From positions 124,001-188,000 of IMG/VR virus record IMGVR_UViG_3300027985_000918: 64,000 bases of DNA. One strand, written 5' to 3'. The position numbers and the translations under genes were made by a program. Of the stretch, positions 39,575 to 51,191 are shown piece by piece (positions within the stretch are counted from its first letter, which is position 1; every line of letters starts with the position of its first letter). The notes below the pieces were generated by a model. The model was not told where the DNA came from. It was given only the letters and a program-made list of their open reading frames with translations, and searched no databases.

Positions 39575-39823
39575 ATGAACACGGAAACCACCCGTGGTGG
39601 CCTCCACCAGCCTGGCGTAGGAGTTCGATTACTTATGGCTTCCAAGTGGCCCCTTCAGATCAAAGTCGGCAAGACCCGGTTCAAGATCATGCACCCGGAA
39701 CAGGGTCGGCACCAGATCATCAACACCAAGACAGGTGAGGTGGTGGGACATCTGGTAGAGCACCAGGTGCCGTTCAACGGACTCAAGGTCGCAGCCCGGG
39801 AAGTCATCGAGCAGGTCGCATGA
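39575..39823 (+). CDS. Hypothetical protein
   Basis: Promoter motif plus conserved leader. Confidence 0.65.
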   Translation: MNTETTRGGLHQPGVGVRLLMASKWPLQIKVGKTRFKIMHPEQGRHQIINTKTGEVVGHLVEHQVPFNGLKVAAREVIEQVA

Positions 39824-40287
39824 TGGGCATCGAGATCGAACGCAAATATCTCGTTGCCGACGACGGCTGGAAGCAGGAGCACGTCATCTCCCACCAGTCC
39901 ATTCGCCAGGGGTTCCTGTCCACGGACCCACTGCGGGTGGTCCGGGTGAGAGTTACCGAAGACCAGGGGTTCTTGACCGTCAAAGGGGCGGGCCATCTGT
40001 CCCGCCCCGAATACGAGTACGAGATCCCCACTGAGGATGCTGAAGCTCTCCTTCTGCTCTGCAAAGGGAAGATCATCCAGAAGACCCGCTGGACGCTGGT
40101 TTTCTCCGGCCGACACTGGGAGGTGGACGTATTCGAGGGCCAGCACGCAGGACTGGTCCTGGCTGAGACCGAAATGAAGGTCGAGAACGAGATCTTCAAG
40201 GTCCCTTCCTGGGCGGATCTGGATGTTACGATGTACCCCAGATACAAGAACATGAACCTCGCCTTGGAAGGGGAAGACATCCCATGA
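39820..40287 (+). CDS. CYTH / triphosphate tunnel metalloenzyme
   Basis: EIERKYLV, IRQGFL, VRVRV, LTVKG, EYEYEIP, KTR, WEVDVF, LAETE. Confidence 0.9.
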   Translation: MMGIEIERKYLVADDGWKQEHVISHQSIRQGFLSTDPLRVVRVRVTEDQGFLTVKGAGHLSRPEYEYEIPTEDAEALLLLCKGKIIQKTRWTLVFSGRHWEVDVFEGQHAGLVLAETEMKVENEIFKVPSWADLDVTMYPRYKNMNLALEGEDIP

Positions 40288-41096
40288 GCTTGACCATCAT
40301 CTCTCTCGGTCATGGAGGGGGCGTTCCTGTCTTCCCCTACGGGACCGCCGGCAACACCAACTTCGCTCTGGTCCCTGGGCGGCACGAAGGACCCGTGGTG
40401 GGCATCCTCCGGTCCAACCCCTACTGGCTCATCGACTGCGGGCCGGAAACCTTGATGAGGATCGCAGGGACGGGACAGATCCCGGAACCCATGGTTCAGA
40501 ACCTCCAGGGGGTCATTGTCACTCACTGCCATGGGGATCATTCTGGGGGGCTCTACGGTCTGGCTTGGAGGACTCACTTCATCGAAGAGAGGAAGGTCAA
40601 CCTGGTCTACCGGGAAGAGCTGATCCCGTTTTTGGAGGATCAGCTCATCGAGATCCAGTACCTGTCCGGAGACACCCCTCGGGTGCCCTGGACCTACTAC
40701 TGGGAGACCGTCGCCTGTTCTCCCACCCGGATATGGATGGACCTAGGGGATTTCAAGATCTGCTTTTTCAAGGTGGACCACAACATCCCCGGTTTTCCCA
40801 GCTTCGGAGTCGAGGTGCAGACCGTAGAGGGGGGCAGAGCTGTCTTCAGTGGAGACAGCGCCCACCCCATCGACGCCCACCGCTTCAGTGGTGCCGACGT
40901 GGTGTTCCACGATGTGCAGTTCTACACGAGCGACCCGAGGGTAGCCGTACACTGCCCATACGAGGCCCTGGAAACCGCTGTGAGCCCCGAGTTGCGGAAA
41001 AAGGTACACCTGGCCCATACCGGCCAGAAGCCGCCGGGGGCGGCCTTAGAGGCGTTCTCCTGGGCTTCTCTTGATACGATCGTAGTGGTGGATTAG
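40284..41096 (+). CDS. MBL-fold metallohydrolase resembling Apyc1 cyclic-nucleotide phosphodiesterases
   Basis: LIDCG, THCHGDHSGG, VDH, FSGDS, VFHDVQF, VHCPYEAL, VHLAHTG. Confidence 0.8.
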   Translation: MSLTIISLGHGGGVPVFPYGTAGNTNFALVPGRHEGPVVGILRSNPYWLIDCGPETLMRIAGTGQIPEPMVQNLQGVIVTHCHGDHSGGLYGLAWRTHFIEERKVNLVYREELIPFLEDQLIEIQYLSGDTPRVPWTYYWETVACSPTRIWMDLGDFKICFFKVDHNIPGFPSFGVEVQTVEGGRAVFSGDSAHPIDAHRFSGADVVFHDVQFYTSDPRVAVHCPYEALETAVSPELRKKVHLAHTGQKPPGAALEAFSWASLDTIVVVD

Positions 41097-42682
41097 CGGG
41101 AGGAACCCGAACGGCTATTGCTGTCGGTGGTGAGGCGCCGGCTCAGAAGGTACGTGTCGGTGTCGTGCTTGTCCGACAGGTCCTCCAAGAAGTTGATCAT
41201 TCCGACCGTGAGCACATCGAGGCGTTCACCAAGGTCCAGCACCTGCTTGATGTTCCCCTTGAAATCCTGCTCAGCAGCCAACGCCTGATCGAAATTGTCC
41301 CCAGGAATCTCATCCCACTGCTTGATCCAAAACGCCGTCCACATGGCCTGCTGCTTGGGATCCACAGCATCGACACCGTACATGTCCACCAGCTTCTCAG
41401 CCAGGCCGTCGATCTGATCGTCCATCGCCTCATACAGGCGCTGGAACAGGAGATGATCCCCGTAGTAGCCCGTCCCCGAAGCGGTCCAGTGGCAGTTGAG
41501 AATGAAGTCACGAAGGGCTCGGAGCTGACTCAGGAGGCGCATCAAAGCCAACTGGGCTGAGGCTTTGCCAGCGGCATCGGCCTTTTTTCCCGCTGCTGGG
41601 GGAACTACCTGAGTGATTCGACCGTCATTTGTCCCTACCCACAAAGGGACTTGGTGCAGAGCGGGAATGCTGGAATGCAGGTTCCTCCGTCCGACAAGCC
41701 CCTTGAAAGCCCGCAGGCCAAACCGGGTGGCCTGCCCTGAAGAAATGTCAGCGTAGATGAACCACGCCTTGTGTGGCTGGACGTAACGGAACTTGTGCTG
41801 GGCCAACTCAATGACTTTGTTGTCTTTCATCATGGAGGGGGCCAGCTCCCGAATCTGGGACATCCCGAACTTGCGCTCGAACTCCGCTAGCGCTTTCATC
41901 TCTGGGGTCTCTTCGGGCTCTGGTCCCACATCGTCGAACAAAGTGAACCCATCCAGCATGGCCCTCTTCCCTACCGGCTCGACCACCCAGTCGTCCACAT
42001 CATCGAACCTATCGAGCTGGGGGCGAACCATCGTTGCCGCCTTGTTGTCGGCGTCCTTGTCGTCCCGAGCCGTGAATTCCTTGGACCATAGCTCCTCCCC
42101 TGAGTCACTGAACAGGTAGACTCGGTACTTCCCGCCCGCCGCCGCCTGCTTGGACACCCATTTTGAAGCCAGGGAGTAGACGTAGCTCTCCACCTCATCG
42201 GTGGAAACCCCTGCCTTGTCCGCCAAGCCGTGAACCTTCGAGTCAGGCACGGCTTTCCCCCCATACTCCCTCAGGAGGGCGTGGAGCTGATCCTTCAGAT
42301 CCTTAGGGATGGCGGCCTTCTTGTCGCACTTGCCGGCCTCCATCCTCTCCAGCTTATCGTAGTAGGCCGGATCTTCGGTGAGGTGGTCCCGAGCAATCTC
42401 CCGAGCAAGGGATGGATCATCCGTGTGCTCCATCTCGACCTTCTGCCCCTTGGCAACAGCTTTGGGATCGAAGTCGGAGGGCTTCTTTTTGTCAGAGAGT
42501 CCGCCAGGAATCTGGTCCTTAGCCGTTTTGAACTCGTGGGAAGGTTTCATCTTCTTGTAGATCCCCATCACATAGGCGTAGAAATCCTTGTCGGACTCTT
42601 TGCGGCCGTCATCCTTGGCAATTTCCACCGCTTTGGTCCACTTCTCTTCATCACGCCTCGTGTGGACCACGTTGCTGGGCAT
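41093..42682 (-). CDS. Multidomain phage protein: ChaB-like N-terminus, DUF5661-like module, C-terminal ferritin/Dps-like four-helix bundle
   Basis: GQKVEMEHTDD..LAREIARDHLTEDPAYYDKL; HWTASG...HLLFQRLYEAMDDQIDGLAEK. Confidence 0.6.
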   Translation of the reverse strand: MPSNVVHTRRDEEKWTKAVEIAKDDGRKESDKDFYAYVMGIYKKMKPSHEFKTAKDQIPGGLSDKKKPSDFDPKAVAKGQKVEMEHTDDPSLAREIARDHLTEDPAYYDKLERMEAGKCDKKAAIPKDLKDQLHALLREYGGKAVPDSKVHGLADKAGVSTDEVESYVYSLASKWVSKQAAAGGKYRVYLFSDSGEELWSKEFTARDDKDADNKAATMVRPQLDRFDDVDDWVVEPVGKRAMLDGFTLFDDVGPEPEETPEMKALAEFERKFGMSQIRELAPSMMKDNKVIELAQHKFRYVQPHKAWFIYADISSGQATRFGLRAFKGLVGRRNLHSSIPALHQVPLWVGTNDGRITQVVPPAAGKKADAAGKASAQLALMRLLSQLRALRDFILNCHWTASGTGYYGDHLLFQRLYEAMDDQIDGLAEKLVDMYGVDAVDPKQQAMWTAFWIKQWDEIPGDNFDQALAAEQDFKGNIKQVLDLGERLDVLTVGMINFLEDLSDKHDTDTYLLSRRLTTDSNSRSGSSR

Positions 42683-43956
42683 TAGCGGATCTCCTTGTAT
42701 GTGAGGGTCGACAGGGCCTCTCCGGACCCCGTCACCAATCGGGCACACACCCACAACTCATCGGGCGTACCGTCATAGGCCGAAACCACAGGCACAGATT
42801 CGATTAGAGTACCCGAAACAGCATTGCCACGGGACTGAGCTCCCCCCCCAAGCACCCCGGAGCTGAGAACTAGAGAGCGGGCCCCATTGGGCAATCCGCT
42901 CCCGTTTACCCCCACCGCAATCTGGCTGCGGCTGTACTGGGCAATGGAATCCGCCCCTGGGACATCTGCCCAGACGGCAGCTCCTGTCCCACCGGGATTT
43001 AGCACCAAGCACCACAACAGGGCTTCGGTGTCCAGGTTGATGAAGCTATGCTCCAGAGCCCGGAGAGTGGCGTGGATGTTGGCGGCTTGAAGCCGGATAC
43101 CTAGAATGGTGGTGAGAGTGGTACTGGTCGCAGCCAACCCCGTTCCAGAGTCGGGCTGAGACCAAACCGATCGTTGGGCGCCAGGCTCATCCACGGCACC
43201 TTCCCGGTTTACTGCCGAACAGATCTGCATCAACTCTGTGGGGCCCGCAGTGGCCCCGGTGTTCTCGATTTCGTAGCGGACGGGGAGCTTCGGGGAACGG
43301 ATGTAGGGGAGAGTGTTCCCCCCCTGGTTGGCATGCTTGAACTCATGGACGTAGATGATCATCCCGTCGATGTCGAAGCCCATACGGACTCGCCCAACCC
43401 CCAACCATTGGAAATCGCACACCCAAATCTGGGTCTTGGTTAGATCCAGGGTGATACCGCTAGGCCCGGTTCCGTCAAGGGGATCCATGTTCCAGGAAGA
43501 CTGAGGGATGCGTTCGTAGGTGGTGGCCCCGGAGGCAACGGACCGGATGACCATTTCAGGGTCATCGTTATCCCTCACCTCCAAATACATCCCTTCGGCC
43601 CCATTGAAGTAGCCAACCTTCTGAGTCATATTGGCCTGGGGAGGCGCCATCAAAAAAGTGGCTAGGACAAGCTGACCCTGGGCTGCACGGTAAGAATAGA
43701 ATTCTTTGGACTGTCGGACTACACGGTCTCCGGCTGCCGCCGTCACTGCCAACCGCATGGTTCCCGAGCTAGGATGATATGTAGCCGTTCCGGCCCCCGC
43801 CACAGTGCCGTCCCAATACAGAGTACGATCTGCCGTGTCAAACAACGTCGAGAACTGGAGATGAGGATAGCTAACCCTCACCCGACTGAACGGGTCCAGG
43901 TTGGGGCCGTCAGAAATACCCACGTCCTCGGGGAAAGTGCTACCGGGATAACTCAT
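42682..43956 (-). CDS. Probable virion structural protein (beta-rich, lectin/LamG-like)
   Basis: Ala/Gly/Thr-rich and beta-strand-rich; late-type cluster; inference only. Confidence 0.5.
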   Translation of the reverse strand: MSYPGSTFPEDVGISDGPNLDPFSRVRVSYPHLQFSTLFDTADRTLYWDGTVAGAGTATYHPSSGTMRLAVTAAAGDRVVRQSKEFYSYRAAQGQLVLATFLMAPPQANMTQKVGYFNGAEGMYLEVRDNDDPEMVIRSVASGATTYERIPQSSWNMDPLDGTGPSGITLDLTKTQIWVCDFQWLGVGRVRMGFDIDGMIIYVHEFKHANQGGNTLPYIRSPKLPVRYEIENTGATAGPTELMQICSAVNREGAVDEPGAQRSVWSQPDSGTGLAATSTTLTTILGIRLQAANIHATLRALEHSFINLDTEALLWCLVLNPGGTGAAVWADVPGADSIAQYSRSQIAVGVNGSGLPNGARSLVLSSGVLGGGAQSRGNAVSGTLIESVPVVSAYDGTPDELWVCARLVTGSGEALSTLTYKEIR

Positions 43957-44651
43957 GCCAGACTCCACTCAGTGCCGGAGAACACGAACTTGAGGGCTGC
44001 GTAGTTTCCGTTGATGACGATGCTACCAGCACCGTCAATAGTTTCTGCCCCGTCTGCGTTGATGGTGATGTTGTTGACCGTTGCGGTCCCGGTTTTGTCC
44101 TTGACAGTCACCACCCCAGTCGTATGGGTAGCTCCCGCAGGGAGGTTGACCACGAAAGGGACGGGGATTGCGGGATTGACCAGCACATACTCGTCCCCCA
44201 CCGCTACAGCATATGGGGTAACCAGAGCTTCCACGATGCTGGGGGACCCGGGGCTGAACGACTGATTCTCCCACCGGGAATGAGCGGCGCTGTATCGCAG
44301 GAACTGACCATCCGCAAGGGCAAGGGGGTACTGAACGTCTCCCAAATCCTCCAACAGGATCTCAGACGTGAGGGCCGACCCTAGGATGAACTGAGCGCTG
44401 ATCTCTCCCTGGTCGCATAGGCGGCGGATATCCCCAGACTCGAACGATCTGGCAACTGCTGTGCCGTAAGTCAGATCGATGGACCCACCGGCAGGGACGT
44501 AGAAGGGTTCTGGGGAGAGACCCCGGATCTCGGCAGCGGCCCGCAGGTCATCAAGCAGCAAGGAACTGCCCCGCACCGTACCTGCAAGGTACGGAGGGCT
44601 CGGCAGGGTCTTCCCAAGATGGATGAGCCGGAGTTGAATGCCTTCGGCCAT
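43953..44651 (-). CDS. Probable virion/tail-associated protein
   Basis: C-terminal VNLPAG...VTVKD.TG.A..NNITI...GAETIDG module typical of tail-fibre/baseplate proteins. Confidence 0.55.
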   Translation of the reverse strand: MAEGIQLRLIHLGKTLPSPPYLAGTVRGSSLLLDDLRAAAEIRGLSPEPFYVPAGGSIDLTYGTAVARSFESGDIRRLCDQGEISAQFILGSALTSEILLEDLGDVQYPLALADGQFLRYSAAHSRWENQSFSPGSPSIVEALVTPYAVAVGDEYVLVNPAIPVPFVVNLPAGATHTTGVVTVKDKTGTATVNNITINADGAETIDGAGSIVINGNYAALKFVFSGTEWSLA

Positions 44652-44721
44652 GCAGGTTTCCTCCACACCCGTCCCCCGGGTTGGTCTCTACCGACAGAGG
44701 CCTATAGGCGTTTGACCGGGC

Positions 44722-45627
44722 TTATGCGCCGAACAACTCTCCGATGAGGTCTTCTTCGCCCACTCCCGTCCACTTGGACGGGAACTTGGAGATCAGGGCT
44801 TCCCCCAGGTTCTTGAGGTAGTCGTAGCCGTAATCCCCATTCTCGGCACATCGGGAGAGGGTGTCGGGGATGTCATTCTCGATCTCCGAGCAGAAGAACA
44901 CGGCGGGGGCGGCAATAGCCGCAGAAGTGTCCACGTCCCCTGTGAGAGACACGATGTGCTTGAGAATAGCCGAGGCACTGTCGTAGCGTTGGATCGCCCC
45001 AATGGCCGCACGAACGTGCTGAAAGCCTTTCTCCTGAATGGGAGTAACCCAGCCATCTGCCCAACCCCATCCTGGAATCAGCTCTTCGATGTACGCTCCC
45101 GCATCCGCCTTGGGGCCGATGTGGTGGTATGTGTAGTGGGTGAGCAAAGCCGAGGCGGCAGCGGCCTCCAGCCCCGCCCTGGTGGCGTGCGTGAGACACC
45201 CCTGGAGGTAAGCGGCGTCAATGACTCCCTGCTCTTCCTTGAGCAATCCCAGGACCGGAGCCCGCATAGCGGCCCCCGACTTGTCACTGTAGGGACGGAT
45301 GCCCTTCAGAAACTCGGCCGGAGTTTGGACTCTCGCCAGAAAGTCGTAGAACGCCCCGGCGTATCCCTTGCGGGGGTCCCGTCGGAATGTGCTCAAAAAA
45401 GACTGGGCGATGTCACCCAAGCTCCAGGTGGACGGGAGTGGCTGCCGAAGCATCAACTCGGCCAACGCTACCTGCATCTGGGTGTCGTCCGAATATGTCC
45501 CGGGCTTCGTCTTCCACTTGGGGTGGCTCTGGAAGGTCCGAAGGTTGTTCCTCTTGGCGACGAATTTGGGGTCGGCATACTCGAAGCCGAAACCGTATCC
45601 GTCAAAAATCGCCGTATAGTGGAGCAC
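44722..45627 (-). CDS. ADP-ribosylglycohydrolase (ARH/DraG family)
   Basis: AIFDGYGFGFEY, YSDDTQM, SGAAMR, LTH, GDVDT. Confidence 0.88.
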   Translation of the reverse strand: MLHYTAIFDGYGFGFEYADPKFVAKRNNLRTFQSHPKWKTKPGTYSDDTQMQVALAELMLRQPLPSTWSLGDIAQSFLSTFRRDPRKGYAGAFYDFLARVQTPAEFLKGIRPYSDKSGAAMRAPVLGLLKEEQGVIDAAYLQGCLTHATRAGLEAAAASALLTHYTYHHIGPKADAGAYIEELIPGWGWADGWVTPIQEKGFQHVRAAIGAIQRYDSASAILKHIVSLTGDVDTSAAIAAPAVFFCSEIENDIPDTLSRCAENGDYGYDYLKNLGEALISKFPSKWTGVGEEDLIGELFGA

Positions 45628-45659
45628 TCTTTGGACTCTCCTTTGATGGGGCAGCCTAT

Positions 45660-45686
45660 CTACCCGGGAATCCTACCCCCGTTACC
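45660..45686 (-). promoter_or_regulatory. Phage promoter motif upstream of ARH
   Basis: GGTAAC-N15-GGGTAG. Confidence 0.7.
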
Positions 45687-46851
45687 GGCTGAGGTCTCTA
45701 CGGCGGGGATCCGGCGGAGGGGCGCTCGGCCCACCCGGCACCATCGAGAGGGATGCGTGAACCGTCCCCAGGTTCTCGTCAGTGTACCGGGTGCCGGCCT
45801 GACGGGCGGAGAGAGCCTGGGTGAACGTGTCGTACTGACTGGTCACCTTGGCGACCGCCCCCAACATCACATCTACTACCCGACGCTGGTCGTGCAGCGG
45901 GAGGACATGATCCGATCCCAGAACCCGATTCCAGTACCCGTCGATATCGTAAGAACAGGATTTGACATAATAGTTGTGGTCTGCAGTGTGGGCCAGAACG
46001 GTGAACACTTCCCCCTTGCGCCGGAGGCAGGAGAACGTGTCCTTAGCCGTGTCCAGCTCCTCGTCTTTGCTGATCCCGACCCCCTGCAAACAGTAGCGGC
46101 TCGCCATGCTCTCGGCACCGGCCTCGTCGGTGATAAAGAACGTGAAGACGTGTTTGGCCGACCCAGTGTCCACGGCGTGCAGGAGCCAGTGGGCGACGAT
46201 CTCCGGGCTCTCTTCACCGTCCCCCCCACCCGAGGCCTCGGTGTTCAGGGCCTCCAAATGGTCGTCGAGAAGGGGTCCGCTGGCGAAGTCGATAACCTCG
46301 ATCACGTCACCGTACTTCACATCGCCGTATGTGATGAACAGGATCTGAAGGTCATCCCCCAGGAACTTCTGGGCCTCCCCGAACATCAACGGGAGGCGAC
46401 GGAAGATCTCGGGAACCCAGGACCGGATAGACCCAGTCACATCCACGACGACCTGGATGACGGCCTTAGCCGTGCTCTTAAGCGTCTTGCCGTGGGGCCT
46501 CCGGTTGAAGGAGTGCGGCGGCACCGGGACGTGGTTATGCTGCCAAACCACAGAAGCGGCAGGCTTAGGGGCGGGCTTCGGCGGCGCCTGAACGGCAGGG
46601 CTAGGGTTCCACGCCCTGGACGCCTGGTCCTTGACAGCCTTATCCTTGGCAGCCTTGTCTTTGCACCCCCAGCACAGATCACCGCTGTAGTTCACCTCCT
46701 TGCCACAGGAGCAGCGGTAAGTAGGGGCTGGGGTGCTATAACCTCTCCGGGCTCGGCTGTAATCAGTTCTGCTGTAGATATCCTCGCTGGAGTCACTCCG
46801 ATCACGATAGTCACGTCGGTCACTGCCGCCCCATCCAAAGGATCCACTCAT
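45682..46851 (-). CDS. vWA-domain protein with RS-rich/zinc-finger N-terminus
   Basis: VVDVTGSI MIDAS, TYGD, SGGGDGEESPE, FITDE; CSC...CWGC. Confidence 0.75.
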   Translation of the reverse strand: MSGSFGWGGSDRRDYRDRSDSSEDIYSRTDYSRARRGYSTPAPTYRCSCGKEVNYSGDLCWGCKDKAAKDKAVKDQASRAWNPSPAVQAPPKPAPKPAASVVWQHNHVPVPPHSFNRRPHGKTLKSTAKAVIQVVVDVTGSIRSWVPEIFRRLPLMFGEAQKFLGDDLQILFITYGDVKYGDVIEVIDFASGPLLDDHLEALNTEASGGGDGEESPEIVAHWLLHAVDTGSAKHVFTFFITDEAGAESMASRYCLQGVGISKDEELDTAKDTFSCLRRKGEVFTVLAHTADHNYYVKSCSYDIDGYWNRVLGSDHVLPLHDQRRVVDVMLGAVAKVTSQYDTFTQALSARQAGTRYTDENLGTVHASLSMVPGGPSAPPPDPRRRDLSR

Positions 46852-47642
46852 CGGTCCCTCCACTGCTCCTCGCAGCTCTCTCGCCCCCACACATCCATAC
46901 GGATGTGGTACAGCTCTCGCCGTACATCATCCGCCGAGGGGGGTCTCTTAGCCGGGTCTCGTGCAATCATCTGCTCCAACAGATCAGCCAGGGGCTCGAC
47001 CATGTCGGAAGGCACGGTTCCCTTGTGAATGTCTCCCCCGGCCAGGGCAATACCTACCTTGCCGACGGAGTAGATGTCCGACTCAGGAAGAGGTGGGAAC
47101 CCCTGCTGGAACTCAGGAGCCATGTAGCCAGGGGTTCCCCCTTTGGCCTTCGTCTTCTCATTGGGTTCTAGCGTTGCCATACCCAGGTCTACCAGGGTGA
47201 CCTGGTGATCCTCGATGTCGAGGATGGCGTTGGCCGGCTTGATGTCGCAGTGGACGATTCCGTGCCGGCGGTGCAGATAGTCCAGAGCACCCAAGACCCG
47301 ATCCAACACCCAGCAGATGTGCTCGTCCGCCACAGGACCCCGGGTTTCCAGGTGCTTGTCTAGGGGGGTCCCCGGAATGTAGCTCAGGACCATGATCTGG
47401 CCGATGTCTCCACCCACCTCGAAGTAGTCCAACAGGCTGGGGAACTGGAAGTGGCGGAGCTTCGCCAACAGCTCCGCCTCCTGGCGGAACATCCTGGTGA
47501 ACGGATCCTTGTGGGTCTTCTCCTGTTTGATGACCACAGGAAGACCCCTGCCGAGGATACAATGCCGCCCTAGATACACGTCTCCGAAAGCACCCCCTCC
47601 GAGCTTTTTACGAATCTCCCAGCTTCCGATGACGTGTCCCAT
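46848..47642 (-). CDS. Hanks-type Ser/Thr protein kinase
   Basis: LGGGAFGDVY, VIK, EAELL, HCDIKPAN, DLG, GTPGYMAPE, SDIYSVG, RPP. Confidence 0.93.
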   Translation of the reverse strand: MGHVIGSWEIRKKLGGGAFGDVYLGRHCILGRGLPVVIKQEKTHKDPFTRMFRQEAELLAKLRHFQFPSLLDYFEVGGDIGQIMVLSYIPGTPLDKHLETRGPVADEHICWVLDRVLGALDYLHRRHGIVHCDIKPANAILDIEDHQVTLVDLGMATLEPNEKTKAKGGTPGYMAPEFQQGFPPLPESDIYSVGKVGIALAGGDIHKGTVPSDMVEPLADLLEQMIARDPAKRPPSADDVRRELYHIRMDVWGRESCEEQWRDR

Positions 47643-47739
47643 CTCAACAACACTCCCCGAACAGCTTGCCCCGCACCCTGTCGTACCCGGAATGAACCCG
47701 TTCCCATCCTCCAGACGGCGGATGGCGTGGTGACTCAGC

Positions 47740-48210
47740 TCATGGAAAGGGGGACTTGTGGGATGTCCGGAAGTGGCGAGACCACAGCTCCCGGACAACT
47801 TCTGGGGGAGCATCCGTGGCGAGGCCCTGAGGCGAACAGCCCCTCCCACCCCCGTACCCGTACACATGGTACTTGCCCCAACGACCGAGGAACACACTTG
47901 CGTCCCACCAGAAATCCCAGAGGGGAGTCCCCTCAGAGTTCAGCTCCCCCGTGTCATAGTAGCAGAGTTCCACTCCACTCTTCCCCAACTCCCGAAACGG
48001 CTCAGGGGTGTCACCCCAGGAATCGGGATCGATATACACAGCCCCCTCATCCTGCATGAGCTGCCAATCTCCGGGCCAGCAGTCGTTGCCGGAGGCGGAC
48101 TTGGCGACTGCAGGGGCCATCCTGGTGAGCTGCCCCAGCAACTCACCCACCCGGGCTTCGGCCCTCTGACGGGTGGTGCGGGGTTCAGTTCCGAAAGTGA
48201 ACGTCTTCAT
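47740..48210 (-). CDS. Hypothetical protein
   Basis: ATGA-coupled to upstream gene. Confidence 0.6.
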   Translation of the reverse strand: MKTFTFGTEPRTTRQRAEARVGELLGQLTRMAPAVAKSASGNDCWPGDWQLMQDEGAVYIDPDSWGDTPEPFRELGKSGVELCYYDTGELNSEGTPLWDFWWDASVFLGRWGKYHVYGYGGGRGCSPQGLATDAPPEVVRELWSRHFRTSHKSPFP

Positions 48211-49442
48211 ACGTCGTCGCCGGTCGCTTTGCCGTAGTAGGCGGGCAAACTGGGCATAGCCTCGTAGAGGCATGACCGTAGGTAGGGGTACCCGAGATCG
48301 TCCCAAATGCGGAAATACGGGATAACATTCCCGAACTTCTCCCTTTCGTTGAGGATCTGGATACGTCTGATCTTCTCATCCTCTGGTAGGTGTTGCTCGT
48401 CGAAGCGAGCCTGGGTGTTGGGGTCCACACCTCTTTTTGCCAAGAGTTTGCTTTGGTCTGAGTTTCGCACTACGATCACGTTGCCGTTGACCAAAGAGGC
48501 CATGTCATTCTCGACCAGGAGAGCCCACTCCAGGATGATGACCCCCGCCTTGTCCGCCAACCACTCCCGCATTTTCCGGAGGACGTGAGGCTTGGTCCTC
48601 GTGTGGATCTGCTTGAGCATGTCCGGGGTGATCTCCCCGCTAGAGATCTTGGCCTTGAGCACAGCCGTGTTGACATTGTCTCCAAGGGGCATCAACACAT
48701 CCTTGCCCACGAGGTCAGCGATATCGTCCCGGACCTTCTGAGCGCCTGGCGTGTCCTCCTCGTATAGGTCACGGATGCACTTATCGAGGTTCAGGTGGTG
48801 GGCGGGGATGCCGTCGAGCCTGAGCCTCTTCTCCAGCTCCTTCGCCACCCAGGTCTTGCCTGTCGCCACCCGACCGCAGATACCAACCATGAATTGGCGA
48901 TGCAGTTTGACCTCCAAGCGATGCTTCACTCGGAGTGGCACTAGATGACCGATATCGACGTGCCGCTGGGCCATAGCCTTGACCAAACTGGAGCTGACGT
49001 GAGCCCAGTCAGGATCCGGGTGGACGAACACCACCATGTCCTTGATGCCGGGCATGATCCGGTCGTGGTGGCCCATCTGAGACTCCTCGTAAGCACGGTC
49101 ACGAGCGTCCCTCACCCCCCGAAAAATCACGTCGATCCCCTCCCGGAGGACGACGTCCACCAGAAGGTCGTTGGACCCGATGACCCGCCATCTCCCCCGA
49201 CAATCACCCGGAAGGAAAGTCGAGAGAGCATGGGTGACATGAAGCATCCTCTCGTTCATCTCTAGGAGGTACTTGCCCGCCTTATCGTCGTTGTTTCCGA
49301 CCCAGACCACCAGCTCGTCGATGACGGGTGCCCCCGGATCGTACTTCCCGAGGCACTTCCGAATGATGTGCAGGTGCCCCCGGGTCACGGGGTCTCCCGA
49401 CAAAGCGAACAATCCACGCACGGAGAACCTCCTTTCGTCCAT
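48207..49442 (-). CDS. Bifunctional phosphopantetheine adenylyltransferase / dephospho-CoA kinase (CoaD-CoaE fusion)
   Basis: SGDPVTRGH, IFRGVR..D..YE, HVSSSLVK (CoaD); VGICGRVATGKT, LDKCIR, EWALLVE (CoaE). Confidence 0.8.
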   Translation of the reverse strand: MDERRFSVRGLFALSGDPVTRGHLHIIRKCLGKYDPGAPVIDELVVWVGNNDDKAGKYLLEMNERMLHVTHALSTFLPGDCRGRWRVIGSNDLLVDVVLREGIDVIFRGVRDARDRAYEESQMGHHDRIMPGIKDMVVFVHPDPDWAHVSSSLVKAMAQRHVDIGHLVPLRVKHRLEVKLHRQFMVGICGRVATGKTWVAKELEKRLRLDGIPAHHLNLDKCIRDLYEEDTPGAQKVRDDIADLVGKDVLMPLGDNVNTAVLKAKISSGEITPDMLKQIHTRTKPHVLRKMREWLADKAGVIILEWALLVENDMASLVNGNVIVVRNSDQSKLLAKRGVDPNTQARFDEQHLPEDEKIRRIQILNEREKFGNVIPYFRIWDDLGYPYLRSCLYEAMPSLPAYYGKATGDDV

Positions 49443-49447
49443 GACCC

Positions 49448-49473
49448 CTACCCGTTTTGGGTAGCTCGTTACC
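49448..49473 (-). promoter_or_regulatory. Phage promoter motif upstream of coaD-coaE
   Basis: GGTAAC-N14-GGGTAG. Confidence 0.75.
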
Positions 49474-49513
49474 CGTCCCTCGGGGGGTATGGTCCACCAC
49501 ACAGGAGGTCCCC

Positions 49514-50488
49514 ATGAGCAACCTGCGGCTGATTTCCGGAGGTCAGAACAAAGCCCCGGGGGGGTCCCCATCCCAAATCGCCAACATCAAAGGCATCGGG
49601 ATGGCCGACTACGTCTGGCCCGCCCAGGATGGGGGGATTTATTGGAGGAAGCGTCCCGTAGTCTTGATTAAGGGTGGCACTGTTCGGGACGCCTCCGATA
49701 CAGTCCCCATCATCGAGGTGTGGACTTTCGCCACGACGCTGCCAGGGGAATCCCCGGAGGTGAATGTCCTCAACCAGTACGCCCTGAACCCCTGCTACTA
49801 CCTTCCGGATCCGACCCGGCCCGAGGGATCTTTCCTCGTGTGCTGCGAGGTTAAGACCCTTGACGGAAACCCCACCGCCTCAAACTCCAGGGCCACATTG
49901 AGGGCCACCCATGAATCCGTGGGGGGACTGCAAGACTCTCTGGACCACCGAGGTTCGGCCTGGGGTTGGATTCAGGGGTATAGCCTGATCGATGCCAAAG
50001 GCAACGAGGTGACGTTCGAGATCAGCAACGAGGTGTTCGAGCACCACTTCGGAGCTTGCATCGACGCCGGCCTCATGATCATGGCGGGGGACCCGCTCTC
50101 TCTGGGGTTCTGGTCCTACACTCTGGGAGACCGGGGTTTCCCCGAGATCCTGGAGCCGGACCTCCCGAACCCCATCATCATGGGGGATCAGGTCATCCTC
50201 TCCCGGCATCTCCTGAGCAAAATCGCTCGGGACCGAGGACTCCGAGTCCTCTGGGACAGCACCATGCTGACCTACACGGATGAGTCCCTCGCTGAGTCTG
50301 AAGACCCCCTGGAGCTTCTGGATAGAGTCGAGGGAGCGTACCCATACCGAACCTGGAACCCCAACAGCCGGGAGTTCCAGATCTCCCACATCGCCGTCAG
50401 CGTTCCCCCGAACGCTGATCCCTATCACCAGGCCGCTAAGGTGTTGGCGGCTATCCACCATAAGGGCAACAATCGTGCCGCAGAATAG
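49514..50488 (+). CDS. Glutamine synthetase type II-like protein, catalytically degenerate
   Basis: ADYVW, LNP....DP.R...FLVCCEV....P..SNSR, VFEHHFGACIDAGL, GDQVILSRHLL; the EQEY motif appears as IQGY. Confidence 0.65.
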   Translation: MSNLRLISGGQNKAPGGSPSQIANIKGIGMADYVWPAQDGGIYWRKRPVVLIKGGTVRDASDTVPIIEVWTFATTLPGESPEVNVLNQYALNPCYYLPDPTRPEGSFLVCCEVKTLDGNPTASNSRATLRATHESVGGLQDSLDHRGSAWGWIQGYSLIDAKGNEVTFEISNEVFEHHFGACIDAGLMIMAGDPLSLGFWSYTLGDRGFPEILEPDLPNPIIMGDQVILSRHLLSKIARDRGLRVLWDSTMLTYTDESLAESEDPLELLDRVEGAYPYRTWNPNSREFQISHIAVSVPPNADPYHQAAKVLAAIHHKGNNRAAE

Positions 50489-51191
50489 CAAGGTCATCAT
50501 CGTCGAAGGGCTGATCGGAAGTGGGAAGACCACCCTCACCAGAGAGTTGGGTAGAGCCCTCGGACCCAATACCCTCACCCTGTTCGAGCCGGACGAAAAG
50601 GAGGGCAAGGAAGCCAGCAATCCTTACCTGGCCTCCTTCTACGGCGACGCCCCCCGCTGGGCATTCACTATGCAGGCACACCTCCTAGCAGAGCGGTTCC
50701 GCATGCACCTGCACGCACAGTGGCACGCTTTGCAGGGCCACGGGGACGCTGTCCTGGATCGGAGCTTCTATGGTGACACCGCCTTCGCCCACCTACAGCT
50801 CCAGCTCGGCCAGATGACTCAGCATGAGTTCGACACTTACTCCCGCCTCTACCACGCCATGACAGCCTCCGTCCTGCTACCTACCGTCTGCGTGCGGGTG
50901 CTCACCAGTCCGGAGATCTGCAACGAACGGGTCTCCCGCCGGATGACGGTTGAGACCGGCCGGAAATGCGAGACCGCCATTGACCTGGACTATCTACAGG
51001 GTCTCGACCGGGAGATCGACCACATGGTCGGTGTCCTCCGTTCCCAGGGTGTGACCGTGCTCGATGTCCCCTGGGATGAATCCCGACCAAAAGAGGAGGA
51101 CCGCAAAGAAGCGGTGAGCGCCCTGGTATCCCGTATCCAAGGGGTACTCCCCTTCAACTCGTTCCTGGACACCCACCGCCGGAGGATTTGA
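50475..51191 (+). CDS. Deoxynucleoside kinase
   Basis: IVEGLIGSGKTT, EP, RWAFTMQ, VLDRSFYGD, R..R...E..IDLDYL. Confidence 0.9.
   Translation: MPQNSKVIIVEGLIGSGKTTLTRELGRALGPNTLTLFEPDEKEGKEASNPYLASFYGDAPRWAFTMQAHLLAERFRMHLHAQWHALQGHGDAVLDRSFYGDTAFAHLQLQLGQMTQHEFDTYSRLYHAMTASVLLPTVCVRVLTSPEICNERVSRRMTVETGRKCETAIDLDYLQGLDREIDHMVGVLRSQGVTVLDVPWDESRPKEEDRKEAVSALVSRIQGVLPFNSFLDTHRRRI

What the first reader, a model, noticed from the sequence alone, without database searches (positions are those of the whole stretch)
44722..48210. Ser/Thr kinase - vWA - ADP-ribosylhydrolase operon
Seen: an intact Hanks kinase is ATGA-coupled to a vWA protein whose N-terminus is Ser/Arg/Tyr-rich (DRSDSSEDIYSRTDYSRARRGYS) and has a CxC/CxxC finger, followed by ARH. 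Known: vWA plus kinase pairs occur in TerY-type and other conflict systems. Inference: the vWA N-tail is the kinase substrate, giving a phage phospho/ADP-ribose signalling or counter-defence module.
Basis: partly seen in the sequence, partly recalled or inferred. Interest (0 to 1): 0.6.

Follow-up and report, generated by a model that had tools for sequence, protein, structure and literature searches.

The report
Kinase–vWA pair in a huge phage
A 402-kb phage couples an active protein kinase gene to a gene for a so far unannotated vWA-fold (metal-binding adaptor) protein; the same pair recurs in many large phages, including all Bxz1-like mycobacteriophages, and in a few tiny-genome bacteria, while the ADP-ribose hydrolase next door is only a loose companion.

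Summary
On the minus strand an intact Hanks-type kinase (46848-47642) overlaps by ATGA a 389-aa protein (45682-46851), followed after 54 nt by a catalytically plausible ADP-ribosylglycohydrolase (44722-45627). The middle protein matches no Pfam, NCBIfam or PADLOC model. Its AlphaFold model has a vWA fold, and it carries an invariant MIDAS-like DxTGS...E[S/T]xE...TDE set.

It belongs to a large unannotated family (phrog_2971; 1540 representative clusters). A kinase-fold gene lies directly upstream in 16 of 17 informative contexts: huge phages, about 200 Bxz1-like mycobacteriophages and ~1-Mb Patescibacteria-labelled genomes. In distant clades the partner carries a J domain, and in some, mycobacteriophages included, it is a pseudokinase. 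So the conserved unit is a kinase-fold::vWA pair, not simply enzyme plus substrate.

In the window's clade the real operon starts upstream with a CoaD/CoaE-like fusion. ARH is syntenic in this clade and directly adjacent in the window, but absent from the cellular copies.

The TerY-P analogy is architectural only: no TerY sequence match, no adjacent PP2C. Function is untested. I rate it a new variant of kinase–vWA signalling modules, of moderate-to-good interest because Bxz1 in M. smegmatis makes it testable.

The parts
48207..49571 (-). CoaD-like nucleotidyltransferase + CoaE-like P-loop kinase fusion. This is the first gene of the conserved cassette. The longest ORF is given; the probable start is near 49442.
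   Evidence: PF01467 and PF01121. TIGR01510 CoaD 86 bits and TIGR00152 CoaE 37 bits, both below the curated cut-offs. The same fusion lies directly upstream of the kinase in L003, L004, L005, L007, L011 and L026, and one small ORF away in the window, L006 and the P0003 contig. L024 has a 393-aa ORF in the matching position that I did not scan.
47740..48210 (-). orf156, an orphan insert between the CoaD/E gene and the kinase
   Evidence: Its ATG overlaps the CoaD/E stop as ATGA. No family hit and no usable Atlas relative. Not homologous to the ORF in the same position in L006.
46848..47642 (-). Hanks-type Ser/Thr protein kinase, 264 aa, non-RD (HCD), all catalytic motifs intact, no J domain
45682..46851 (-). 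vWA-fold partner protein, 389 aa (phrog_2971 family), translationally coupled to the kinase
46816..46851 (-). N-terminal motif 1 (residues 1-12, MSGxFGWGGxDR type), nearly invariant in the window's clade
   Evidence: Alignment A1; N-termini of 172 family members.
46738..46761 (-). Motif 2 (residues 31-38, [FYW]xxA[RK]xxY), a short predicted helix
   Evidence: Found in 95 of 150 full-length family members. Helix 32-38 in the model. ESM Atlas matches start at residue 32.
46663..46713 (-). CxC-x10-CxxC Zn-ribbon-like insert (C47, C49, C60, C63), lineage-specific
   Evidence: Present in the window and in variant forms in P0005, P0044 and P0059 only. Beta hairpin at pLDDT about 60.
45727..46494 (-). 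vWA core (residues about 120-375) with the MIDAS-like residues: D137-x-T139-G-S141 (46429-46443), G176-D177, GGG 208-210, E214-S215-x-E217, T241-D242-E243 (46123-46131)
   Evidence: Invariant columns in A1. DxTGS in 139 of 150 family members. Core pLDDT >90. vWA matches.
44722..45627 (-). ADP-ribosylglycohydrolase (ARH family), 301 aa, catalytic motifs kept
   Evidence: PF03747 at 1.7e-22. E16, Y45-S-D47-D48-T49 and G230-D231-x-D233-T234 are invariant in 4 phage orthologues. Nearest solved relative is ARH3, E 6e-6. It is the only ARH in the 402-kb genome.

Best explanation
The functional unit is a two-gene cassette. An active, non-RD Hanks-type Ser/Thr kinase is translationally coupled to a vWA-fold partner, so the two are made together and most likely act as a heteromer.

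The vWA protein has a MIDAS-like metal site (D-x-T-G-S, E-[S/T]-x-E, T-D-E) and conserved short motifs in its disordered N- and C-terminal tails. I take it to be the regulatory or targeting subunit. It docks on the kinase fold and, through its metal site, binds a still unknown (probably host) ligand. In this clade the kinase then phosphorylates that ligand and/or the partner's own tail.

In the window's phage lineage the pair is the distal part of a longer co-directional gene string: CoaD/CoaE-like enzyme, orf156, kinase, vWA, ARH. The ARH is a separate de-ADP-ribosylating enzyme that travels in the same auxiliary gene block. It is not an obligate third component.

Shown: gene structure, coupling, fold, conserved residues, and conserved adjacency across phages and some bacteria.
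Inferred: physical complex (about 0.7), vWA as targeting or regulatory subunit (about 0.5), phosphorylation of the tail (about 0.35), a role in host takeover or counter-defence (about 0.4).
For: - ATGA overlap and RBS.
- Intact kinase motifs, invariant in orthologues.
- vWA fold with invariant MIDAS-like residues.
- A kinase-fold gene lies directly upstream of a family member in 16 of 17 informative contexts, usually with a 4-nt overlap. These are the window, L003-L007, the P0003 contig, L011, L024, L026, L001, L018-L020, Sebata/Bxz1/Sauce and G090. The contexts range from 37 to 64% GC, and the vWA proteins are only about 29-49% identical.
- Pseudokinase partners in some clades point to binding, not just catalysis, as the conserved relation.
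- An intein sits directly before the TDE-equivalent motif in phage Sauce, marking that motif as a conserved core site.
- Complex prediction: ipSAE 0.45 (median of 3 runs) against a best control of 0.00, verdict 'weak support'. That mark was reached by 58 of 80 solved complexes and 2 of 110 mismatched pairs. At 0.60 or under it was reached by only 7 of those 80 solved complexes and by both mismatches that passed. The runs agree in at least 28% of contacts and the partner's pLDDT is at least 70.
- Phage kinases are known to act in broad anti-defence (T7K, PMC13645617).
Against: - There is no experimental or expression data. No RNA run holds the locus.
- The complex prediction gives only weak support and no interface.
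- Within the window's clade, much of the synteny may reflect common descent rather than selection.
- Vibrio phage Va1 has a family member with no kinase-like gene next to it.
- The ligand of the MIDAS-like site is unknown, and metal binding is inferred from alignment only.
- The cassette also sits in cellular, non-phage neighbourhoods, so a phage-specific takeover role is not required.
Confidence: 0.5

Rival explanations
1. The Ser/Arg/Tyr-rich N-tail of the vWA protein is the dedicated kinase substrate. Together with the ARH it forms one phospho/ADP-ribose signalling or counter-defence module of the phage.
For: - Active kinase coupled to the vWA gene.
- Family-wide, the N-tails are richer in S+T+Y than the cores (0.236 against 0.156).
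- ARH is adjacent in the window, 2 genes away in L003, and 2.5-3.5 kb away in L005 and L011.
- An ARH fragment lies 3 kb from a distant member (L019), and a NADAR gene 1.1 kb from the Va1 member.
Against: - Pseudokinase partners in Bxz1-like phages, L018 and G090 keep a vWA protein with its tail and MIDAS-like site.
- The window's own tail is barely enriched (0.20 against 0.17).
- The conserved tail elements are an aromatic/Gly motif and an FxxARxxY helix, not S/T clusters.
- No ARH lies within 6 kb in the four cellular contexts or in the mycobacteriophage loci.
- ARH position and strand vary.
Confidence: 0.2
2. The conserved job is chaperone-linked and non-catalytic. The kinase fold and the vWA protein form an adaptor that, in most clades through an N-terminal J domain, hands a client to host Hsp70/DnaK, for example for assembly, replication or remodelling of a host complex. 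Kinase activity in the window's clade would be a secondary elaboration.
For: - J domains with an HPD motif precede the kinase fold in L001, L020, L018, Sebata/Bxz1 and G090. L019 has a J domain whose HPD is degenerate.
- Catalytic Asp, Lys and DFG are lost in L018, Sebata/Bxz1 and G090.
- vWA proteins are known co-chaperone adaptors of MoxR ATPases, also in jumbo phages (PMC7824862).
Against: The window's clade has no J domain, and every catalytic residue is strictly conserved, which argues that phosphotransfer matters here. No Hsp70 gene was seen next to any copy.
Confidence: 0.17
3. It is a TerY-P-like or PD-T4-6-like defence or superinfection-exclusion system, carried by phages and by some bacteria. 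The kinase fires on infection and the vWA protein acts as the sensor.
For: - The best PADLOC hits of the kinase are mad6 and PD-T4-6 models, at 1e-42 to 1e-38 over the kinase domain.
- TerY-P triads (vWA + PP2C + kinase) act as stand-alone defence systems (PMC11090510).
- The family is sporadic in Patescibacteria, 2 of 301 sampled genomes.
Against: - The vWA protein matches no PADLOC or VWA model.
- No PP2C is adjacent. The genome's one PP2C lies 145 kb away.
- The pair was found in about 200 Mycobacterium phage records (Bixzunavirus in those inspected), among nucleotide-metabolism genes in those inspected. That looks like a fixed gene of the phage's own programme rather than an accessory defence island.
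- The PADLOC hits cover only the generic kinase domain.
Confidence: 0.1
4. The adjacency has no functional meaning: unrelated genes kept together by descent.
For: Most window-like contexts belong to one clade of related huge phages and CPR-like genomes.
Against: - The adjacency holds across clades whose flanks share nothing else, whose GC ranges from 37 to 64%, and whose vWA proteins are below 35% identical.
- 4-nt overlaps are the rule.
- The kinase family co-varies with the vWA clade.
Confidence: 0.03

Closest known systems
TerY-P triad (TerY vWA + PP2C phosphatase + Ser/Thr kinase; Anantharaman et al. 2012; a stand-alone defence system in Gao et al. 2020, as summarised in PMC11090510)
   Same: A Hanks-type kinase is genetically coupled to a stand-alone vWA protein with a metal site. 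The proposed logic is a phosphorylation-dependent switch. TerY-P is often embedded among nucleoside/nucleotide-metabolism genes, as this pair is.
   Different: - The vWA protein here is invisible to Pfam VWA and PADLOC models and has DxTGS in place of DxSxS.
- It carries conserved disordered tails.
- No PP2C is in the operon.
- The kinase has no C-terminal Zn-ribbon or OB fold.
- The gene order is kinase then vWA.
- Partners can be J-domain fusions or pseudokinases.
- It is mainly phage-borne.
PpkA of the Pseudomonas aeruginosa H1-T6SS (Hanks kinase fused to a periplasmic vWA domain; from my own knowledge, not tested here)
   Same: A kinase and a vWA domain work as one unit, with the vWA part as the sensing or regulatory element.
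   Different: PpkA is a single membrane-spanning polypeptide. Here there are two soluble proteins with no TM segment, and no Fha or PppA partners.
Phage T7 kinase gp0.7/T7K and relatives (PHROG 2828; PMC13645617)
   Same: A phage-encoded protein kinase used during infection. T7K disarms defences by phosphorylation.
   Different: This is a different kinase family: phrog_2361, with a canonical DLG rather than the DPV motif. It has no shut-off or DNA-binding domain and an obligate vWA partner. Promiscuity is unknown.
MoxR AAA+ / vWA chaperone–cochaperone pairs (noted in jumbo phages in PMC7824862)
   Same: A stand-alone vWA protein serves as adaptor for a partner enzyme encoded next to it.
   Different: The partner here is a protein kinase or pseudokinase (with or without a J domain), not a MoxR ATPase.
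ARH3 / DraG / Tri1-type ADP-ribosylhydrolases (for the third gene)
   Same: PF03747 fold with the di-metal Asp/Thr motifs. The nearest solved relative by sequence is ARH3.
   Different: Identity is very low (E about 1e-5). The substrate (Ser-, Arg-, nucleic-acid- or free ADP-ribose derivative) cannot be told from sequence.

Membership tests
Hanks-type (eukaryotic-like) protein kinase, PF00069 | Profile match over the curated cut-off | tested here: met
   116.9 bits against a cut-off of 31.7; phrog_2361 'serine-threonine kinase' at 1.2e-30.
Hanks-type (eukaryotic-like) protein kinase, PF00069 | Catalytic residues: G-loop, VAIK Lys, alphaC Glu, HxD...KxxN, DFG Asp, APE | tested here: met
   G17-F19-G20, K39, E55, H131-C-D133, K135, N138, D152-L-G154 and E177 are invariant in 7 orthologues. 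The kinase is non-RD (HCD).
von Willebrand factor A (vWA) domain | Sequence match to the Pfam VWA family models | tested here: not met
   No Pfam family at E<=0.01. No NCBIfam or PADLOC hit. The A1 profile against PDB sequences finds nothing meaningful.
von Willebrand factor A (vWA) domain | vWA three-layer alpha/beta fold | tested here: met
   AF2 core pLDDT >90. The Foldseek PDB top hits shown are all vWA domains or vWA-containing proteins, E 4e-6, prob 1.0. A VWA-annotated ESM Atlas cluster matches at TM 0.72, rmsd 3.0 over 218 residues. BFVD VWFA proteins also match.
von Willebrand factor A (vWA) domain | MIDAS motif DxSxS...T...D | tested here: inconclusive
   D137-x-T139-x-S141 is invariant (DxTGS in 139 of 150 members). 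E214-[S/T]215-x-E217 and T241-D242-E243 are invariant. Their positions fit a MIDAS, but the 3-D geometry and metal binding were not checked.
TerY-P triad | TerY-like vWA protein recognisable by sequence | tested here: not met
   No PADLOC or Pfam hit for the vWA-like protein.
TerY-P triad | PP2C phosphatase in the same operon | tested here: not met
   The only PP2C of the genome is at G000:C1:23852-24466, about 145 kb away, beside a second weak kinase-like ORF. The Metallophos genes after the vWA gene in L005, L007 and L011 match only generic phosphoesterase models. Their orthologue in this genome is 124 kb away.
TerY-P triad | Kinase with a C-terminal Zn-ribbon or OB fold | tested here: not met
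   The kinase is 264 aa and consists of the kinase domain only.
phrog_2971 (unknown function) | Profile match | tested here: met
   1.1e-9, residues 145-301. tblastn links it to about 200 Mycobacterium phage records, Bixzunavirus in those inspected.
ADP-ribosylglycohydrolase, PF03747 | Profile match and di-metal-binding motifs (N-terminal Glu; [S/T]DDT; DxDT) | tested here: met
   80.8 bits against a cut-off of 26.2. E16, S46-D47-D48-T49 and D231-V-D233-T234 are conserved in 4 orthologues and align to the ARH3 motifs. Activity and substrate were not tested.
CoaD (PPAT) + CoaE (dephospho-CoA kinase) | Equivalog-level scores for both halves | tested here: inconclusive
   CoaD 86.2 bits against a cut-off of 103.3, and CoaE 36.6 against 65.55. 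These are clearly the nearest families, and NMN/NaMN adenylyltransferase scores only 17 bits, but both scores are below the cut-offs.

The most novel reading that the evidence does not exclude
Kinase-fold::vWA (phrog_2971) pairs are a widespread, undescribed two-protein signalling and adaptor module of large phages, borrowed by or from a few bacteria. In this reading a MIDAS-bearing vWA subunit with docking tails directs a Hanks kinase (or, in J-domain/pseudokinase versions, host Hsp70) onto a specific host target during infection. That would make it a new class of phage host-manipulation or counter-defence device, distinct from TerY-P and from T7K.
Probability: 0.3. Interest if true: 0.75.

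Novelty: new variant of a known kind. Interest (0 to 1): 0.58.

Why it matters
- It gives a structural identity (vWA fold, MIDAS-like site, two tail motifs) and an obligate partner to a large family of 'hypothetical proteins'. The family has 1540 clusters at 50% identity and appears in every Bxz1-like mycobacteriophage record found.
- The annotated 'Ser/Thr kinase' of those well-studied phages turns out to be a J-domain pseudokinase.
- It widens the small set of known phage protein-kinase systems beyond T7K.
- Because Bxz1-type phages grow on M. smegmatis and can be engineered, the module's role can be tested directly. It could be host takeover, counter-defence, chaperone hijacking or metabolic control.
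- The shared CoaD/E–kinase–vWA cassette between huge phages and ~1-Mb Patescibacteria-labelled genomes is also a lead on gene flow, or on host range, for huge phages from a hydrothermal-vent sample.

Tried and rejected
- DNA similarity of 44722-48306 to 50,697 phage records: no match.
- Sequence-family searches of the vWA-like protein (Pfam, NCBIfam, PADLOC, PDB sequences): nothing.
A narrower alignment, A4, worked for genomes. The IMG/VR scan found only one further locus.
- The 237-aa ORF upstream of the Va1 family member is not kinase-like (hhalign prob 0.3).
- orf156 (47740-48210) is not homologous to the ORF in the same position in L006 and has no Atlas relatives.
- The idea that Metallophos genes after the vWA gene make a TerY-P-like kinase/vWA/phosphatase triad was dropped. 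They match only generic phosphoesterase models, not PPP phosphatases.
- The idea that the Patescibacteria-labelled contigs are mis-binned phage was rejected. They carry ArgRS, a P-type ATPase, a histidine kinase, HypF, alpha-2-macroglobulin and HlyD, and no homologue of the phage's virion protein.
- No RNA runs hold the locus.
- The promoter/terminator scan gave no intergenic signals.
- Literature searches for a phage kinase–vWA, J-domain or pseudokinase pair found nothing relevant.
- An HAD- or LOG-like reading of the DxTGS and GGGG motifs was considered and set aside, because all the structure matches shown are vWA domains or vWA-containing proteins.


Full report
SOURCE. The window is bases 124001-188000 of a 402,383-bp IMG/VR virus record with direct terminal repeats. 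The two full DNA holders are metagenome runs, one labelled hydrothermal vent, and no RNA run holds the locus. GC is about 60% throughout. Just downstream on the same strand lie a T4 gp9/10-like baseplate gene (43953-44666) and a virion structural gene (42682-43968, phrog_1645, 1e-77). This is a huge tailed phage.

ANATOMY (minus strand).
- 48207-49571: a CoaD-like nucleotidyltransferase fused to a CoaE-like P-loop kinase.
- 47740-48210: orf156, an orphan. Its ATG overlaps the previous stop as ATGA.
- 97-nt gap.
- 46848-47642: the kinase, 264 aa, ATG preceded by GGGGAG.
- 45682-46851: the vWA-like protein, 389 aa. Its ATG overlaps the kinase TGA as ATGA, with GGAGGG upstream.
- 54-nt gap.
- 44722-45627: the ARH, 301 aa, GTG start preceded by AAGGAG.
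No terminator-like site falls in an intergenic gap on this strand.

CHECK OF THE OBSERVATION.
- The kinase is a bona fide Hanks kinase: PF00069 at 117 bits and phrog_2361. All catalytic motifs are intact, and they are invariant in seven orthologues. It is a non-RD kinase (HCD).
- The ARH matches PF03747 at 81 bits. It keeps the N-terminal Glu, the S-D-D-T motif and the D-x-D-T motif that align to ARH3. It is the only ARH in the genome.
- The middle protein matches no Pfam, NCBIfam or PADLOC model and nothing in PDB sequences.
- With a 22-sequence alignment, AlphaFold2 gives a confident core: residues about 120-375 at pLDDT >90, against <50 for most of residues 1-110.
- Foldseek matches that core to vWA domains only (NorD, CMG2/ANTXR, integrin beta-I, TFIIH p44; E about 4e-6, prob 1.0). 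It also matches VWFA proteins in BFVD and a VWA-annotated ESM Atlas cluster at TM 0.72.
- So 'vWA' is correct as a fold, not as a recognised sequence family.
- The CxC...CxxC (C47, C49, C60, C63) exists but is a lineage-specific insert, seen in about four members.

THE FAMILY.
- A word search found 21 metagenomic relatives at 29-49% identity.
- A profile search of 1.84 billion cluster representatives found 1540 at E<=1e-3, 1105 at <=1e-10 and 319 at <=1e-30. The best 150 listed are mostly about 320-350 aa. The sampled members carry no informative name.
- In PHROGs it is phrog_2971, 'unknown function'.
- Invariant or near-invariant features:
  - D-x-T-G-S at the end of strand 1 (139 of 150 full-length members);
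  - G-D after strand 2;
  - a GGG(G) loop followed by E-[S/T]-x-E;
  - T/G-D-E after strand 4.
  By position these correspond to the MIDAS D-x-S-x-S, T and D. This is inferred from the alignment; the geometry was not checked.
- The N-terminal tail (median 63 aa) is disordered and variable, but it carries two conserved short motifs.
  - Motif 1 is clade-specific: MSGxFGWGGxDR in the window's clade, and MYSWG-, MSESGDY...W..DF- or MGGG.Y.RDV-type elsewhere.
  - Motif 2 is [FYW]-x-x-A-[RK]-x-x-Y. It occurs in 95 of 150 members and at residues 31-38 of the window protein, where a short helix is predicted.
- Many members also end in a [ST]-x-x-L-L-like tail.
- S+T+Y content is 0.236 in tails against 0.156 in cores family-wide, but only 0.20 against 0.17 in the window protein.
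- In mycobacteriophage Sauce the homologue (gp259, annotated 'HNH endonuclease', 595 aa) carries a roughly 255-aa intein-like insert (Cys at its start, Asn-Cys at its end). It sits exactly before the I-F-I-G-D-E motif that corresponds to T241-D242-E243. Inteins typically sit in conserved functional sites.

NEIGHBOURHOOD CONSERVATION. A kinase-fold gene lies immediately upstream of the family member in 16 of 17 contexts where the upstream gene could be read.
- The window.
- Huge-phage or metagenome contigs L003 (518 kb), L005 (286 kb), L007, L011 (IMG/VR, 536 kb) and the P0003 contig.
- L004 (652-kb contig) and the MAG contigs L006/L023, L024 and L026.
- LR745208, a 485-kb uncultured phage (L001).
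- Three further distant metagenome members, L018, L019 and L020.
- The Bxz1-like mycobacteriophages: Sebata gp260/261, Bxz1 gp247/248 and Sauce gp258/259 were inspected, and about 200 Mycobacterium phage records hold the family member.
- A sampled Patescibacteria genome, G090.
- The exception is Vibrio phage Va1, whose upstream 237-aa ORF is not kinase-like.
Overlaps of 4 nt are the rule in the window's clade. The contexts span 37-64% GC and share little else, so descent alone does not explain the adjacency.

THE PARTNER VARIES IN A TELLING WAY.
- In the window's clade it is a bare, fully intact kinase domain.
- In L001, L019 and L020 it is an intact kinase with an N-terminal J domain (PF00226). 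The HPD motif is present in L001 and L020.
- In L018, Sebata/Bxz1 and G090 a J-like N-terminus with HPD is followed by a kinase fold that has lost the catalytic Asp and Lys (HGSIEPGN, HGAITPDN, HENIEPGN), the DFG Gly, and the G-loop. By the usual criteria this is a pseudokinase.
- Their vWA partners keep DxTGS, E[S/T]xE, GDE and the tails.
So the feature conserved across the whole family is the pairing of a kinase fold with the vWA protein, not phosphotransfer to it. In the window's clade, however, every catalytic residue is strictly kept, so catalysis matters there.

COMPLEX PREDICTION. For the kinase plus the full-length vWA protein, the ipSAE was 0.45 (median of three runs) against a best control of 0.00. 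The verdict was 'weak support'. That mark was reached by 58 of 80 solved complexes and 2 of 110 mismatched pairs. At 0.60 or under it was reached by only 7 of those 80 solved complexes and by both mismatches that passed. The runs agree in at least 28% of contacts and the partner's pLDDT is at least 70. No interface was released. I count this as a small push in favour of binding, because the prior from gene coupling was already high.

OTHER NEIGHBOURS.
(a) The CoaD/CoaE-like fusion (or a CoaD-like protein of 340-352 aa).
- It precedes the kinase directly, mostly with overlapping stop and start, in L003, L004, L005, L007, L011 and L026. L024 has a 393-aa ORF in the same position that I did not scan.
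- It precedes the kinase with one unrelated small ORF in between in the window, L006 and the P0003 contig.
- So in this clade the conserved operon is CoaD/E – kinase – vWA.
- Its nearest families are CoaD (86 bits) and CoaE (37 bits), both below cut-off. NMN/NaMN adenylyltransferase scores only 17 bits.
(b) ARH.
- Orthologues at 39-42% identity lie adjacent in the window, two genes downstream in L003, and 2.5-3.5 kb away on the other strand in L005 and L011.
- An ARH fragment lies 3 kb upstream of the distant member in L019.
- A NADAR gene lies 1.1 kb upstream in Va1.
- None was seen within 6 kb in the four cellular-type contexts, in the mycobacteriophage loci, or among the genes scanned in L001, L018 and L020.
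- That makes roughly three independent co-localisations. This is suggestive of a shared auxiliary block in phages, not of an obligate third component.
(c) Metallophos.
- A Metallophos gene follows the vWA gene in L005, L007 and L011.
- Its orthologue in this genome (36-39% identity) is 124 kb away.
- It matches only generic phosphoesterase models and no PDB sequence, so I do not call it a protein phosphatase.
(d) In the distant clades the pair is followed by a pyruvate-kinase-barrel-like gene (L001, L018, L019, L020) and/or a PurA-like adenylosuccinate synthetase (L018, Bxz1/Sebata/Sauce, Va1). Nucleoside and nucleotide enzymes are common nearby: Nuc_deoxyri_tr2, dNK, TK, PfkB, Pnk, NrdD. In the window a dNK sits at 50280-51191 on the plus strand.

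NOT ONLY PHAGE.
- A scan of species-representative genomes found the CoaD/E–kinase–vWA cassette in four MAGs of 1.0-1.1 Mb. Three are titled Uhrbacteria, Moraniibacteriota and 'Patescibacteria group', and one 'uncultured Gammaproteobacteria'.
- Their contigs carry cellular genes: arginyl-tRNA synthetase, a P-type ATPase, a histidine kinase, HypF, ABC transporters, UvrA/UvrB and alpha-2-macroglobulin.
- They hold no homologue of the phage's virion protein.
- The family is rare there, in 2 of 301 sampled genomes of that phylum.
- ESM Atlas neighbours also include unnamed clusters from Chloroflexota and Myxococcota.
- The direction of transfer and any host inference remain open.

MECHANISM, WITH GRADES.
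Shown:
- gene coupling;
- an intact kinase;
- a vWA fold with a conserved MIDAS-like set;
- conserved tail motifs;
- near-universal adjacency to a kinase fold;
- J-domain and pseudokinase variants.
Inferred:
- the two proteins form a complex (about 0.7);
- the vWA protein is the regulatory or targeting subunit, binding a ligand through its metal site (about 0.5);
- in the window's clade the kinase phosphorylates that ligand and/or the partner's tail (tail as substrate about 0.35);
- the biological role is host takeover or counter-defence, by analogy with T7K (PMC13645617) (about 0.4). Regulation tied to the CoA or nucleotide enzymes in the same operon is an open alternative.
The ARH most likely acts independently, removing ADP-ribose marks or ADP-ribose-derived molecules. 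Its substrate cannot be read from sequence.

COMPARISON WITH KNOWN SYSTEMS.
- The closest concept is the TerY-P triad (PMC11090510). The membership features fail here: there is no TerY sequence match, no adjacent PP2C, and no Zn-ribbon or OB on the kinase. So it works like a kinase–vWA switch but is not a TerY-P member.
- It also recalls PpkA (a kinase–vWA fusion; from my own knowledge) and MoxR–vWA pairs (PMC7824862).
- It is unrelated to the T7K family (different PHROG, canonical DLG).
- Literature searches found no description of this pair, of phrog_2971, or of the J-domain pseudokinase nature of the Bxz1 'kinase'. The library is limited to open-access papers and preprints.

VERDICT. I class it as a new variant of a known kind (kinase–vWA signalling modules): a large unannotated family with an obligate kinase-fold partner. 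Interest is about 0.58. It is not categorically new and its function is unproven, but it is widespread, has an unexpected pseudokinase/J-domain twist, and is directly testable in Bxz1-like phages.

HOUSEKEEPING.
- No alternative genetic code was used.
- Read laying was not used, because no RNA holders exist.
- Proteins known only from annotated-record loci (L001, L002, L021, L022, L033) were not handed to the restricted fold or profile tools.
- The length window of the search for homologous proteins was compensated by the all-length profile search.

Noticed in passing
window 48207-49571 (-), and L003-L007, L011, L026: A CoaD-like/CoaE-like fusion, resembling a bifunctional CoA synthase, is the conserved first gene of the cassette in huge phages and in ~1-Mb Patescibacteria-labelled MAGs. 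It usually overlaps the kinase start. One relative's contig also carries a DFP (CoaBC) gene. Why CoA-type enzymes are operonic with a kinase–vWA pair is unexplained.
   Followed up: partly
L002 2664-3737 (Sebata gp260), L022 2733-3863 (Bxz1 gp247), L018 3899-5014, L028 2475-3575: The annotated 'Ser/Thr kinase' of Bxz1-like mycobacteriophages, and two metagenomic or CPR relatives, has a J-like N-terminus with an HPD motif. It lacks the catalytic Asp and Lys, the DFG Gly and the G-loop, so it looks like a J-domain pseudokinase.
   Followed up: partly
L033 2399-4186 (Mycobacterium phage Sauce gp259): The vWA-like gene is annotated 'HNH endonuclease' because it carries a roughly 255-aa intein-like insert (Cys...Asn|Cys) directly before the conserved GDE/TDE motif. 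tblastn coverage is similarly truncated in about a dozen of the listed cluster C phages, such as ET08, Quasimodo and Pinkcreek.
   Followed up: partly
L023-L026; G001-G004; G090: The cassette occurs in cellular ~1-Mb genomes labelled Patescibacteria (CPR) in non-phage neighbourhoods, but in only 2 of 301 sampled genomes of the phylum. This may be gene exchange between huge phages and CPR bacteria, or a hint at the host.
   Followed up: partly
G000:C1:22382-24466 (outside the window): A second, weak kinase-like ORF (577 aa) sits next to the genome's only PP2C phosphatase. This is a separate kinase/phosphatase pair in the same phage.
   Followed up: no
L001, L018, L019, L020, L021, L022: In the distant clades the kinase–vWA pair is followed by a pyruvate-kinase-barrel-like protein and/or a PurA-like adenylosuccinate synthetase. 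The latter is annotated '2-aminooxy adenylosuccinate synthetase' in Bxz1, Sebata and Sauce. The recurrent link to purine-nucleotide enzymes is unexplained.
   Followed up: no
L021 3203-3859 (Vibrio phage Va1): A NADAR-domain protein (1e-48) lies two ORFs upstream of the kinase-less vWA-like gene Va1_038. It is another ADP-ribose-processing enzyme near a family member.
   Followed up: no
window 39820-41096 (+) and 41093-42754 (-): A CYTH-domain gene is overlapped by a metallo-beta-lactamase-fold gene. Convergent to them is a 553-aa protein combining DUF5661 and a ferritin-like domain.
   Followed up: no
window 47740-48210 (-): orf156 is an orphan inserted between the CoaD/E gene and the kinase. 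Unrelated small ORFs occupy the same slot in L006 and the P0003 contig, so this looks like a hotspot for insertion inside the operon.
   Followed up: yes
window 50280-51191 (+): A deoxynucleoside kinase (PF01712, 4.5e-32) lies on the opposite strand just beyond the cassette. dNK or TK genes also flank the cassette in L007 and L005.
   Followed up: no
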